DNA of 64,000 nt from Aplysia californica (taxonomy: Eukaryota), in contig NW_004798020.1 of NCBI RefSeq assembly GCF_000002075.1, positions 44,550-108,549 of the forward strand, read 5' to 3'. Below are positions 25,315-28,300 of this stretch, one piece after another. A program made the position numbers and the translations under genes. A model generated the notes under the pieces. That model saw only the letters and a program-made list of their open reading frames with translations, was not told where the DNA came from and made no database searches. How positions within the stretch are numbered: position 1 is the first letter of the stretch; each line of letters begins with the position of its first letter.

Positions 25315-28300
25315 ATGGCGGCAGAACAAGCACAGACTTCTACACAGGCACCGCCCAGGCGGGGTATAATTCTTTTATTATCGTCGATTCAAGTCTAATT
25401 TTCAGGGGGTCATTTCTTAATACCTTTAGTGTACTATTTGGGTTCCTTTGTAAGCAGTTTTTGTCCTGATTGCCTTATGTGATAAGCATGTACAGTAGTT
25501 TAATTTAGTGTAGAGTTGAGTGTATGCATGCATGACTTTGTTTTGACACAGCGTAGCCTACTTAGCTATCATACTGACTTCCTTACATTTACTGACAAGA
25601 TCTTTCGCTGTCTATGGCCGGGTACCCATTCACTCCTGGACAAAGTAAGGAAACTTTTTGTGAGCTGCCTTTCCAAGGGCACAACGACCAAACCTGCAAC
25701 CTCATGATTACGAGTCCAATAGCCCAATCACTAGACTACATACACACAGCCTTTTGAATTGGTTGTAATTCTACTTGACGATCTATGTGTTGGAATTTAA
25801 TTTTTCTTCCAGAGTACCTGTTAGCAATCATTTATTTATCTACATTTTCTTCGTGATCCTTTCCTTTTATTTGTTGTTTACTGTTTGATATTTAACTCAT
25901 CATGCTTCATAATGTGTGTGTGTATAATGTATGACTTTTTTTGTTTCTTTTCAGGAAAATCTCAAGTTGTTGTATCCTTTATATCTGTAGACTGACACGC
26001 TCATGCCACCAGCCTATGCTGCTTAAAATGAGGCCTGAACAGACAAGGATTGTGGTGGCAAATGTCAGACCAAGCTTGCTGCTTTTTGATTGTGCACCGG
26101 GTGACCTTATTTAAGTTTTATCTTCTTCTTCTTCTTCTTCTATCCCGTGGTTGGGGCAACCGTTGGGGCACCACTGCATTGGAAAACCAGCTCTTGCCAT
26201 CTATTTTTGTCCTCTGCTCTCCTCAGATTGTCGCCCATCGTCTTTCCTGTCCACTCTGTAATGTTGTCCTCCCATCTCCTTCTCTGCTTTCCCCTCTTTC
26301 TCTTTTATAGTAGCCCCTAAAAAAGAAGCTAGATTAGATCTATGATAATCTATAATTGATACCCTGGTAAGCACAGAAACAAGATTGTACTGATTATTGT
26401 GTCACTAGGAATAGGTAGCTGAAATAGTTGGGTTTTTTTTTGCGTGTGAGGATTGGTTTATTAAATTATTTTCGCCCAAATAAGCACTTGTCATTTGTAT
26501 TACACTCACTGCATTTGGCCTACTATTGGGTACAGGTAACTGTATGAGCCCCAACATTTATTGTTCTCAACAGGACTTGGCCGATATCAGAGAGCAACGA
26601 AATCAGGGGTGTTGGGTTGTGTGTGTGTGATTAAACACATCTTGGAAAGAAAATTAAGTGTTATAATCAGAGATTGATGTGTGTAGCAGTTTACACAAAT
26701 AACTAAGCTTCTATTGCATAAACTTACTAGGAACATGCTCATCATGTTATTCATATTTTGTTAGTATGGAGTCCATTATGTTGAATTCATGTGTGTATCT
26801 ACATCATGAAGTTTGCTTTGTGGTGTCCTAATTTTAAATTGTTCTTAATGTTGTACCAGGTATTCGCCTACTTCTATTAGACATAGTTGAAATTAGTTTT
26901 TATTTCATTGCGTACAGTTGAGATAATTTATTTGTTAACCAGATCTTCATTTTCTTAATCAATAGTTTATTGGACAATGTTTTAAAAAAATTATATATTG
27001 ACAACAAGTAAGTTCCTAGATACCGCTGAAATTATTGGGACTTTGGAGTATCAGTACTCTTCTCTGTTAACAAATTCTTATGTATCATGACTTTGTGCAT
27101 TTGTCAACATTGTTGAAATTCTTAACTTGGCATCAGCGATCATCCTTACCATTTCAAATACTCCTGTATTTAAATGGCTGGTACTTTGTCTTCTTCTTCG
27201 TCTGTGAGATTCTGCTGTTTGTTTTCAAAGGTAAGATCCCATGTTGTCATTTAATTTCATACACATACCATAATCATGTAGACTTGAACGGAAGTTGAGA
27301 TGTTTGCGACTGATATTAGTTAGATTTTTTTTGTGGCACAACGATGCTTTCATAAAATGTTGTACACTTTTAATAGGTACCAGAAACTAAATTTTCAAAC
27401 TAGCTGTATGCCAAATTTATCTGTTCCATTTGAAAGGCCTATATCCACTGAGCATTTTGGTACCATTCTTTAACATCTCCATCAATTTTTAAGAAAATTG
27501 TAGTTGTTTAAAATTTGATCAAATTTGTTAAAGTCAGTCACTGGCTGCAACCCCATGTTTGACAGACAATAAAAAAGTAACAAGTCCACTAAACATCTGA
27601 ACATTAACAGAGTACAGTCACTATAACAAATATATGGAGCATAATTTTTTTTCAAGACTGTGAGATCTTTACAAATCAGTACTTTATCACCTCAAACACA
27701 ATGTCTGTCGTTATTTCGACAAAAACACCGAGCGTTGACCCGGCCGGCGTCGCACCGGCCCCCGCGGCGAGCGAGTCGGCTCTATACTGTAGTGTACCCC
27801 GCGTGCGGGGTCACATGCTTTCTGTGACTCGCGGAAGGATTGATGTAAAATAATTCCAATTTAATTACTTTATTCTAATAGGAAATGAACTGATCTTTTA
27901 ATTAATAGTTTTTATAAGCCGGTATTTTACACATTTTGTGTAAAAAGTGATCTTTAAACATTTTGACGGTATTTTTAAAAGCTTTCTATAAAGACGCCAA
28001 AGGCTAAACTTATATCACGGGAAAGCCCGTTTAAAGCTCTACAGTTCTCCGCCAATGAAAAGACGGTATTTAGTCAACCCTCGTTCCACGAAGCATTTGA
28101 ATGCACGCGTGTCAATTTTTCAACCGGCCGACCTCGCATTCTGACCGCGAGGGGCTTCGCTTTCGTCGGCGATTCTCCAGTTCCTAATAATCGGACATAT
28201 AAACAACTTACACCATTGTAACGAGGAAAAGCTGAACTTTTACAAGGTGTACGGCATTTGGTGTTTTATAGCGAAAGAGCAAAGAAACAGCGATCGGAAT

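What the first reader, a model, noticed from the sequence alone, without database searches (positions are those of the whole stretch)
25955..27136. 17-nt microexon followed by a U12-type minor intron in the TMEM216-like ciliary gene
Seen: exon 1 ends in phase 1 (..AGG CGG G|gtataa) but the first conserved exon (27137) starts in phase 0. A 17-nt exon gaaaatctcaagttgtt (25955-25971, behind a strong polypyrimidine tract + cag) restores the frame (..RRGKSQVVRSSLPF..). Its donor is GTATCCTTT. The 3' end has TTCTTAAC with the branch A 11 nt from the CAG and no pyrimidine tract. Established: these are the U11/U12 consensus signals, and minor introns are rare and often rate-limiting. Inference: a U2/U12 microexon switch gates this transition-zone protein, since skipping the microexon would frameshift the mRNA. 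Gene predictors could easily miss it.
Basis: partly seen in the sequence, partly recalled or inferred. Interest (0 to 1): 0.8.

Follow-up and report, generated by a model that had tools for sequence, protein, structure and literature searches.

The report
Ancient microexon plus U12 intron, TMEM216
The sea hare's TMEM216 cilium gene really has a 17-base coding exon followed by a rare minor-spliceosome (U12) intron. This layout is shared by animals from sponges to birds and is already in the public gene model, so it is a solid but ordinary old feature, not a newly found switch.

Summary

**RNA evidence.** Spliced contigs from two runs in two studies read exon 1 (ends 25363), then the 17 nt of 25955-25971, then exon 3 (starts 27137).

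**U12 signals.** The intron 25972-27136 has:
- a 9/9 U12 donor, GTATCCTTT;
- a TTCTTAAC branch site whose A lies 11 nt from the CAG;
- no pyrimidine tract, and only 3/9 matches to the U1 consensus.

The genome encodes U11, U12 and U4atac snRNAs. U6atac was not found.

**Already annotated.** The NCBI protein "transmembrane protein 216 isoform X2 [Aplysia californica]" contains the microexon peptide GKSQVV. Gene predictors therefore did not miss it.

**Conservation.** I mapped annotated orthologues onto their own genomic loci. All 12 carry a microexon entered in phase 1 and left in phase 0, followed by a GTATCC donor and a branch site 10-13 nt from the 3' end. The microexon is 17 nt in 10 loci, 20 nt in a tick and 23 nt in pigeon TMEM80. 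The species span molluscs, tick, amphioxus, sea cucumber, pigeon TMEM80, sea anemone, placozoan and sponge.

**Known counterpart.** Mammalian TMEM80 is a listed minor-intron gene; TMEM216 is not (PMC6717393 supplements).

**The proposed switch.** It has no support. Only the inclusion form was seen, and no quantitative reads covered the gene.

Other notes of this scan report further U12 introns in this genome.

The parts
25315..25363 (+). Coding part of exon 1 (MAAEQAQTSTQAPPRR + first base of a Gly codon); ends in phase 1
   Evidence: Sequence. Exact mapping of NCBI protein P0001. RNA contig X5 starts 56 nt before 25364.
25364..25954 (+). Intron 1, U2-type, 591 nt. Weak donor GTATAA; strong pyrimidine tract + CAG acceptor.
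   Evidence: U1-consensus match 4/9; pyrimidine fraction 0.85 before the acceptor.
25955..25971 (+). 17-nt coding microexon GAAAATCTCAAGTTGTT. It completes the Gly codon and encodes KSQVV, taking the frame from phase 1 to phase 0.
   Evidence: RNA contigs in X7 and X5 carry exactly these letters between exon 1 and exon 3. Unique in the window. Present in NCBI protein P0001.
25972..27136 (+). Intron 2, U12-type, GT-AG subtype, 1165 nt
   Evidence: Donor matches the U12 consensus 9/9 and the U1 consensus 3/9. Removed at these borders in RNA contigs. The orthologous intron has U12 signals in 12 of 12 loci.
25972..25980 (+). U12-type 5' splice site GTATCCTTT
   Evidence: By eye, bases +4 to +9 (TCCTTT) are complementary to AAAGGG at the 5' end of the genome's own U11 snRNA.
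27119..27126 (+). U12 branch-point sequence TTCTTAAC. The presumed branch A is 27125, 11 nt from the last intron base.
   Evidence: By eye it pairs with GUAAGGAA of the genome's own U12 snRNA, with one G-U wobble and the branch A bulged.
27137..27230 (+). Exon 3 (94 nt), RSSLPFQILLYLNGWYF...; start of the Transmemb_17 domain
   Evidence: Pfam PF09799 profile positions 1-24..
28717..28809 (+). Exon 4 (93 nt)
   Evidence: Pfam PF09799 profile positions 27-55..
29397..29598 (+). Exon 5 (202 nt)
   Evidence: Pfam PF09799 profile positions 57-107, 54 bits..
31188..31200 (+). Terminal mini-exon of isoform X2: completes the Lys codon, then SAV and the stop
   Evidence: Exact mapping of P0001. This is the subject of another note (s1-710871).

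Best explanation
This is the Aplysia californica TMEM216 gene, the single invertebrate counterpart of vertebrate TMEM216 and TMEM80. Its second coding exon is a 17-nt microexon included in every spliced contig seen. A U2-type intron lies upstream of it and a U12-type (GT-AG) intron lies downstream.

Shown:
- The junctions are used in RNA.
- The intron has the full U12 signal set.
- The genome encodes U11, U12 and U4atac snRNAs.
- The microexon + U12-intron unit is at the same position and in the same phases in 12 of 12 animals sampled, sponge and placozoan included. It therefore dates to the last common ancestor of animals.
- The vertebrate paralogue TMEM80 keeps it.

Inferred:
- The U11/U12 di-snRNP recognises the highly specified donor together with the branch site 11 nt from the acceptor (intron definition), so recognition does not depend on the length of the tiny exon.
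- U11 bound 17 nt downstream may help the strong U2-type acceptor, as shown for the USSE elements of SNRNP48 and RNPC3.
- The U2-type donor of exon 1 cannot readily pair with the U12-type branch site and acceptor of exon 3, so skipping is disfavoured.

On this reading the arrangement enforces inclusion rather than acting as a switch. It also makes the gene's output depend on minor-spliceosome activity.
For: **RNA.** Contigs in X7 (study P4) and X5 (study P3, a 906-nt contig at depth 17.4) read exon 1 + AAAATCTCAAGTTGTT + exon 3. Unique intron sequence has zero depth, so these are cDNA-derived.

**Splice signals.** Donor 9/9 to the U12 consensus and 3/9 to U1; branch site 7/8 with the A 11 nt from the 3' end. 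The optimum of 11-13 nt and the lack of a pyrimidine tract are the accepted criteria (PMC3584512; PMC6717393 methods).

**Spliceosome.** snRNA genes in G000: U12 134 bits, U11 106 bits, U4atac 91 bits. Their 5'ss- and branch-site-binding sequences are intact.

**Public model.** NCBI protein P0001 contains GKSQVV and maps exactly on the window.

**Conservation.** 12 of 12 loci have a 17-, 20- or 23-nt exon 2 followed by GTATCC. The other 47 introns of the same genes match the U12 donor at most 7/9 (mean 4.4).

**Literature.**
- TMEM80 is listed as a minor-intron gene in mouse and human; TMEM216 is not.
- U11 bound at a U12-type 5'ss activates an upstream U2-type 3'ss (PMC8329584).
- Alternative splicing and exon skipping rarely involve U12 introns (PMC3584512).
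Against: - Minor-spliceosome dependence was not tested; the classification rests on sequence signals and orthology.
- U6atac was not found in the assembly.
- Logan contigs drop rare variants, and the two raw RNA runs had no reads on the gene. A minor skipped or retained form cannot be excluded, and 'constitutive' is not quantified.
- Enforced inclusion, U11 help for the acceptor and the order of intron removal are inference only.
- The exon's constant length may simply reflect the general stasis of this gene. Exon 3 is 94 nt in 11 of 12 loci and exon 4 is 93 nt in 12 of 12.
Confidence: 0.85

Rival explanations
1. The microexon is a regulated cassette: cells switch between inclusion (productive mRNA) and skipping (frameshift, early stop, decay) to gate TMEM216 levels.
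For: Skipping would give a stop after 22 codons of exon 3. Exon 1's donor is weak (GTATAA, 4/9 to U1).
Against: No skipped join appears in any of the four runs laid. A join between a U2 donor and a U12 acceptor is disfavoured. Exon skipping around U12 introns is rare (PMC3584512). All 12 annotated orthologues include the exon.
Confidence: 0.07
2. Throttle by retention. The exon is always included, but slow or inefficient removal of the U12 intron limits mature TMEM216 mRNA, coupling transition-zone protein supply to minor-spliceosome activity. This is compatible with the best explanation.
For: In the supplements of PMC6717393, the mouse Tmem80 minor intron has retention indices of 0.33-0.81 across tissues and frequent use of a cryptic 5'ss. 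It is presumed to be the same intron as the pigeon TMEM80 intron that I mapped to this position; I did not check its position myself. Minor-spliceosome defects cause ciliary phenotypes through other transition-zone genes such as TMEM107 (bioRxiv 10.64898/2026.08.20.745718).
Against: There are no Aplysia data. The contigs show zero depth on unique intron sequence, and the raw runs had no reads on the gene. Many minor introns are spliced efficiently (PMC6717393 abstract).
Confidence: 0.25
3. The intron only resembles a U12 intron and is removed by the major spliceosome.
For: GT-AG ends are compatible with both spliceosomes. U6atac was not found in the assembly.
Against: Only 3 of 9 matches to the U1 consensus, and no pyrimidine tract. 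The donor is 9/9 to U12, with a branch site at the optimal 11 nt. The same signals are kept in 12 lineages over the whole of animal evolution, whereas the 47 neighbouring U2 introns show none. U11, U12 and U4atac genes are intact.
Confidence: 0.03
4. The main transcript avoids the microexon by using the in-frame, phase-0 donor CAA|GTCTAA at 25393 and joining it directly to 27137.
For: The frame stays open from exon 1 to 25392, and that join would also be in frame (ORF 25291-25398).
Against: No such join appears in the RNA contigs. Both contigs carry the 17 nt instead. The database protein has GKSQVV, not GIILLLSSIQ. The orthologues conserve the microexon.
Confidence: 0.02

Closest known systems
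Minor (U12-type, GT-AG) intron of mammalian TMEM80, listed in the Minor Intron DataBase (Olthof et al. 2019, PMC6717393)
   Same: Same protein family (Transmemb_17; TMEM80 is the vertebrate paralogue of TMEM216). Same kind of donor: GTATCC after an exon ending in a Val codon. In pigeon TMEM80 (L015) I mapped the intron to the same position and phase, directly before LSSLP and behind a 23-nt microexon.
   Different: Here it sits in the single invertebrate gene that NCBI names TMEM216. Mammalian TMEM216 itself is absent from the MIDB lists. The microexon is 17 nt rather than 23. I did not check the position of the mouse and human MIDB entries myself.
USSE elements of SNRNP48 and RNPC3 (a U11-bound U12-type 5'ss that activates an upstream U2-type 3'ss)
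   Same: A U12-type 5'ss sequence lies a short, conserved distance downstream of a U2-type acceptor, so a cross-spliceosome exon-definition contact is plausible (PMC8329584).
   Different: USSE donors are not used for splicing and act in feedback regulation with unproductive isoforms. Here the donor is a genuine splice site in a coding exon, and no alternative isoform was seen.
Other deeply conserved U12 introns, including those in this genome (ERK and KIF15, scan notes s1-680732 and s1-682751)
   Same: Same intron class, same genome, and the same pattern of pre-bilaterian conservation with later loss in some vertebrate paralogues.
   Different: This one abuts a 17-nt microexon that is itself conserved back to sponges.

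Membership tests
U12-type (minor-spliceosome) intron, GT-AG subtype | 5' splice site matching RTATCCTTT at +1 to +9 | tested here: met
   GTATCCTTT at 25972-25980, 9/9
U12-type (minor-spliceosome) intron, GT-AG subtype | Branch-point sequence like TCCTTAAC lying 10-15 nt (optimum 11-13) from the 3' splice site | tested here: met
   TTCTTAAC at 27119-27126, 7/8, with A27125 11 nt from the intron end. Criteria from PMC3584512.
U12-type (minor-spliceosome) intron, GT-AG subtype | No distinct polypyrimidine tract, and a poor match to the U1/U2-type consensus | tested here: met
   Pyrimidine fraction 0.55 at -23 to -4, with no long pyrimidine run. U1-consensus match is 3/9, against a mean of 6.1 for 47 U2 introns of the gene family.
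U12-type (minor-spliceosome) intron, GT-AG subtype | Formal PWM or SVM score (SpliceRack/MIDB matrices or intronIC) | not tested
   No matrices are available offline. Near-identical 12-mers in the MIDB table, such as TCTGTATCCTTT and TTTTTCTTAACT, score 92-99. This is an analogy only.
U12-type (minor-spliceosome) intron, GT-AG subtype | The intron is removed exactly at these borders in RNA | tested here: met
   Spliced contigs in X7 and X5
U12-type (minor-spliceosome) intron, GT-AG subtype | The host genome encodes the minor-spliceosome snRNAs U11, U12, U4atac and U6atac | tested here: inconclusive
   U12 134 bits, U11 106 bits and U4atac 91 bits, all full length and above the Rfam cut-offs. 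The assembly is a draft of 4332 pieces.
U12-type (minor-spliceosome) intron, GT-AG subtype | Splicing depends on the minor spliceosome (retention after U12, U6atac or U11 knockdown) | not testable with these tools
   Needs an experiment
U12-type (minor-spliceosome) intron, GT-AG subtype | Positional orthology to an accepted U12 intron | tested here: met
   Same position and phase, with U12 signals, in 11 other loci including pigeon TMEM80. TMEM80 is listed in MIDB for mouse and human; I did not verify the position of those entries.
TMEM216/TMEM80 (Pfam PF09799 Transmemb_17) | Collinear match to the Transmemb_17 profile and close orthologues named TMEM216 | tested here: met
   Exons 3, 4 and 5 hit profile positions 1-24, 27-55 and 57-107, at 24, 21.8 and 54.2 bits. 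P0001, named TMEM216 by NCBI, is 100% identical to the window model. Molluscan orthologues are 64-79% identical.
Regulated cassette microexon (switch) | Both inclusion and skipping isoforms observed, with condition-dependent ratios | tested here: not met
   Only inclusion was seen. The raw RNA runs X21 and X22 had zero depth on the gene, and contigs hide rare forms. The test is therefore weak.

The most novel reading that the evidence does not exclude
The 17-nt exon and its U12 donor form a pan-animal, obligate cross-spliceosome module. U11 bound at the donor defines a U2-type acceptor only 17 nt upstream, at a spacing kept since the animal ancestor. Output of the TMEM216/TMEM80 transition-zone protein would then be hard-wired to minor-spliceosome activity. 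That would be a conserved regulatory link, and it could contribute to the ciliary defects seen in minor-spliceosome disorders.
Probability: 0.12. Interest if true: 0.6.

Novelty: new member of a known kind. Interest (0 to 1): 0.35.

Why it matters
The finding gives a clean, RNA-supported example of a coding microexon locked between a major-type and a minor-type intron. The arrangement is as old as animals and survives in the vertebrate TMEM80 paralogue, while mammalian TMEM216 is not listed as a minor-intron gene.

It could serve as a compact natural model for how the two spliceosomes cooperate across a very short exon. It also adds the TMEM216/TMEM80 family to the transition-zone genes, alongside TMEM107 and TMEM231, whose expression passes through the minor spliceosome.

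It does not change the annotation, because public gene models already use these junctions.

Tried and rejected
- **Raw RNA reads.** Runs X21 and X22 (about 15 million reads each) gave zero depth on the exons. No junction counts, retention values or splicing order could be obtained.
- **Alternative donor at 25393.** This in-frame donor is rejected as the main form.
- **U6atac.** It was not found by the Rfam model or by a from-memory pattern. I treat this as inconclusive, not as absence.
- **Teleost TMEM216.** Whether vertebrate TMEM216 lost the intron or converted it to U2-type stays open.
- **TMEM17-like paralogue.** At G000:C332 there is no U12-like donor within about 4 kb upstream of its main domain exon. 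Its 5' exons were not located, so this is inconclusive.
- **Neighbour gene.** An SNase/TUDOR (SND1-like) gene lies head-to-head with TMEM216 in four other phyla. It gave no tblastx hit in window 1-25300.
- **Paper not held.** Niemela et al. 2015 on USSE spacing (PMC4829294) is not in the library.
- **Joined coding sequence.** I sent no hand-joined coding sequence to any search tool. The model was searched exon by exon by reference, and the full-length protein used later (P0001) is a database record returned.
- **Length filter.** To get past it I used the stop-free frame window:28356-28832 with region 113-159, which covers exon 4.
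Full report
**Observation.**
- An ATG at 25315 opens MAAEQAQTSTQAPPRR. The exon ends with the first base of a Gly codon at 25363, followed by gtataa.
- Behind a long pyrimidine run and a CAG lies GAAAATCTCAAGTTGTT (25955-25971), followed by GTATCCTTT.
- TTCTTAAC occupies 27119-27126. A27125 is 11 nt from the last base of the intron (CAG, 27134-27136).
- Exon 3 starts at 27137 in phase 0 (RSSLPFQILLYLNGWYF).
- The lengths 49 + 17 + 94 + 93 + 202 nt keep one frame.

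The short motifs are not rare by themselves. RTATCCTT is expected about 5 times per 64 kb on both strands, and 3 were found. CTTAAC-N7-13-YAG is expected about 7.6 times, and only this one was found. The motifs alone therefore prove nothing. The 17-mer is unique in the window.

**Gene identity.** Searched exon by exon, exons 3, 4 and 5 hit Pfam Transmemb_17 (PF09799) collinearly, at profile positions 1-24, 27-55 and 57-107. A word search through the stop-free frame that contains exon 4 returned the NCBI protein "transmembrane protein 216 isoform X2 [Aplysia californica]" (P0001, 155 aa). P0001 begins MAAEQAQTSTQAPPRRGKSQVVRSSLPF. My exact protein-to-genome mapper places P0001 on the window without a mismatch, with these introns:
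- 25364-25954
- 25972-27136
- 27231-28716
- 28810-29396
- 29599-31187

The window is therefore Aplysia californica, or something indistinguishable from it. The assembly size of 927 Mb in 4332 pieces and scan note s1-682751 agree. The public gene model already contains the microexon.

**RNA evidence.** One search for runs and one laying of reads on 25000-27600 were allowed.
- *Raw reads.* Two raw polyA RNA runs (X21, X22; about 15 million reads each) had zero depth on the exons. The gene is not detectably expressed in those samples.
- *Spliced contigs.* Logan contigs of two other runs from two studies do carry a join. These are X7 (organism A) and X5 (species label B, with sequence identical over exon 3). 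Each has a contig that joins 25364 to 27137 with the 16 letters AAAATCTCAAGTTGTT in between (tables 5 and 5c).
- *Reading the join.* The base after exon 1 (G25364) equals the first base of the microexon (G25955). The transcript therefore reads exon 1 up to 25363, then 25955-25971, then 27137 onward, which is exactly the proposed model.
- *cDNA origin.* Unique intron sequence has no depth in these runs, so they are cDNA-derived. The very deep, two-stranded stretches at 25522-25695, 26044-26391 and 27349-27600 are dispersed repeats whose reads run on into unlike sequence.
- *Other joins.* No other join across this region was seen.
- *Limits.* Contigs cannot show rare variants or expression levels.

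**Intron class.**
- The donor matches the U12 GT-AG consensus 9/9 and the U1-type consensus only 3/9.
- The best branch-site match (7/8) has its A 11 nt from the 3' end, inside the 11-13 nt optimum.
- There is no pyrimidine tract (criteria from PMC3584512, and the methods of PMC6717393).
- The genome has full-length U12 (134 bits), U11 (106 bits) and U4atac (91 bits) genes.
- By eye, the U12 gene carries GUAAGGAA. This pairs with UUCUUA-A-C through one G-U wobble, with the branch A bulged.
- By eye, the U11 5' end carries AAAGGG, which pairs with +4 to +9 of the donor.
- U6atac was not found. In a draft assembly I treat this as inconclusive.
- Dependence on the minor spliceosome cannot be tested here.

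**Conservation.** Two further word searches gave orthologues across animals. I fetched 11 genomic loci and mapped each annotated protein exactly onto its own DNA.

In all 12 loci, exon 2 is a microexon entered in phase 1 inside a nearly invariant Gly codon. It is left in phase 0 one residue before the invariant SSLP motif (alignment A1).

| Exon 2 length | Loci |
|---|---|
| 17 nt | Aplysia, Biomphalaria, Candidula, Crassostrea, Patella, Branchiostoma, Apostichopus, Nematostella, Trichoplax, and the sponge Corticium |
| 20 nt | Ixodes |
| 23 nt | pigeon TMEM80 |

Signals of the intron after the microexon, across the 12 loci:
- The intron starts GTATCC in every case. Eleven match the U12 donor at 8-9 of 9; Trichoplax has GTATCCACA.
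- Each has a TCCTTRAY-like motif 10-13 nt from the 3' end, and the distance is 11 nt in 9 of 12.
- The other 47 introns of these genes match the U12 donor at most 7/9 (mean 4.4). They match the U1 consensus at a mean of 6.1/9, against 3.1 for intron 2.

The unit therefore predates the split of sponges, placozoans, cnidarians and bilaterians.

The encoded peptide is only loosely conserved, as G-[KR]-x-x-[VI]-[VI]. The rest of the gene is equally static: exon 3 is 94 nt in 11 of 12 loci and exon 4 is 93 nt in 12 of 12. The fixed 17 nt therefore need not reflect a special constraint on the microexon.

**Comparison with what is known.**
- The supplements of the Minor Intron DataBase paper list TMEM80 as a minor-intron gene in mouse and human (5'ss GTGGTATCCTGC). 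Mouse retention indices are 0.33-0.81, and a cryptic 5'ss is used.
- TMEM216 and TMEM17 are absent from the same alphabetical lists (PMC6717393).
- A zebrafish preprint uses tmem216 only as a functional partner of the U12-containing tmem107l and does not call it a minor-intron gene.
- No open-access main text links TMEM216 or TMEM80 with U12 introns or with microexons.

The likely history is that the ancestral gene had the U12 intron, vertebrate TMEM80 kept it, and mammalian TMEM216 lost or converted it. I could not fetch a vertebrate TMEM216 genomic locus.

**Mechanism.**

*Shown:*
- The exon is included in RNA.
- The intron has U12 signals.
- Skipping the exon would shift the frame, with a stop after 22 codons of exon 3.

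*Inferred:*
- U12 introns are recognised cooperatively by the U11/U12 di-snRNP at the donor and branch site, so the 17-nt exon does not need classical exon definition.
- U11 at a U12-type 5'ss is known to activate an upstream U2-type acceptor (USSE; PMC8329584).
- A U2-type donor (exon 1) cannot easily use a U12-type branch site and acceptor (exon 3).

These points favour enforced inclusion over a switch. A retention throttle, as the mouse Tmem80 data hint, remains possible but is untested in Aplysia.

**Verdict.** This is a new member of a known kind, and the junctions are already in public models. The pan-animal conservation of the microexon + U12 unit is a tidy comparative result of modest interest.

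**Method notes.**
- No hand-joined coding sequence was sent to any search tool.

Noticed in passing
window 25522-25695, 26044-26391, 27349-27600: Intronic stretches with very high two-stranded RNA depth, many variant letters, and reads that run on into unlike sequence. These are dispersed repeats (SINE- or transposon-like) transcribed elsewhere, not signal from this gene.
   Followed up: partly
window 29599-31200: NCBI isoform X2 (P0001) maps with a last intron at 29599-31187 (donor GTAAGT overlapping the in-frame TAA) and a terminal mini-exon at 31188-31200 that encodes (K)SAV and the stop. This supports one of the two terminal mini-exons in note s1-710871.
   Followed up: partly
window 28440-28630 and 27700-28400: Intron 3 holds a long imperfect (CA)n microsatellite and, upstream of it, a GC-rich block unlike its surroundings, possibly a transposon fragment.
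   Followed up: no
L007:1-563, L008:1-451, L009:1-734, L014:1-457: An SNase/TUDOR (SND1-like) gene lies head-to-head with TMEM216 in limpet, amphioxus, sea cucumber and tick, so the gene pair is ancient. tblastx of those first exons found nothing in window 1-25300.
   Followed up: partly
G000:C332:63272-66378 (L022), minus strand: A second Transmemb_17 gene (TMEM17-like...EYLDDLYRIVLAAVYIVYFIIEIVRLYLGYLGNLMERV...). No U12-like donor lies within about 4 kb upstream of its main domain exon. TMEM17 is also absent from the mammalian minor-intron lists.
   Followed up: partly
G000 (whole assembly): U11 (C799:131438-131574), U12 (C146:332887-333036) and U4atac (C135:136449-136579) snRNA genes were found. 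U6atac was not found by the Rfam model or by a 23-nt pattern.
   Followed up: partly
L010 (Nematostella), exon 3: The old JGI Nematostella model has a 106-nt exon 3 with a weak donor (tta|GTATTT), where the other 11 species have 94 nt. This is probably a mis-called donor that adds four residues (GIVLSS region in alignment A1).
   Followed up: no
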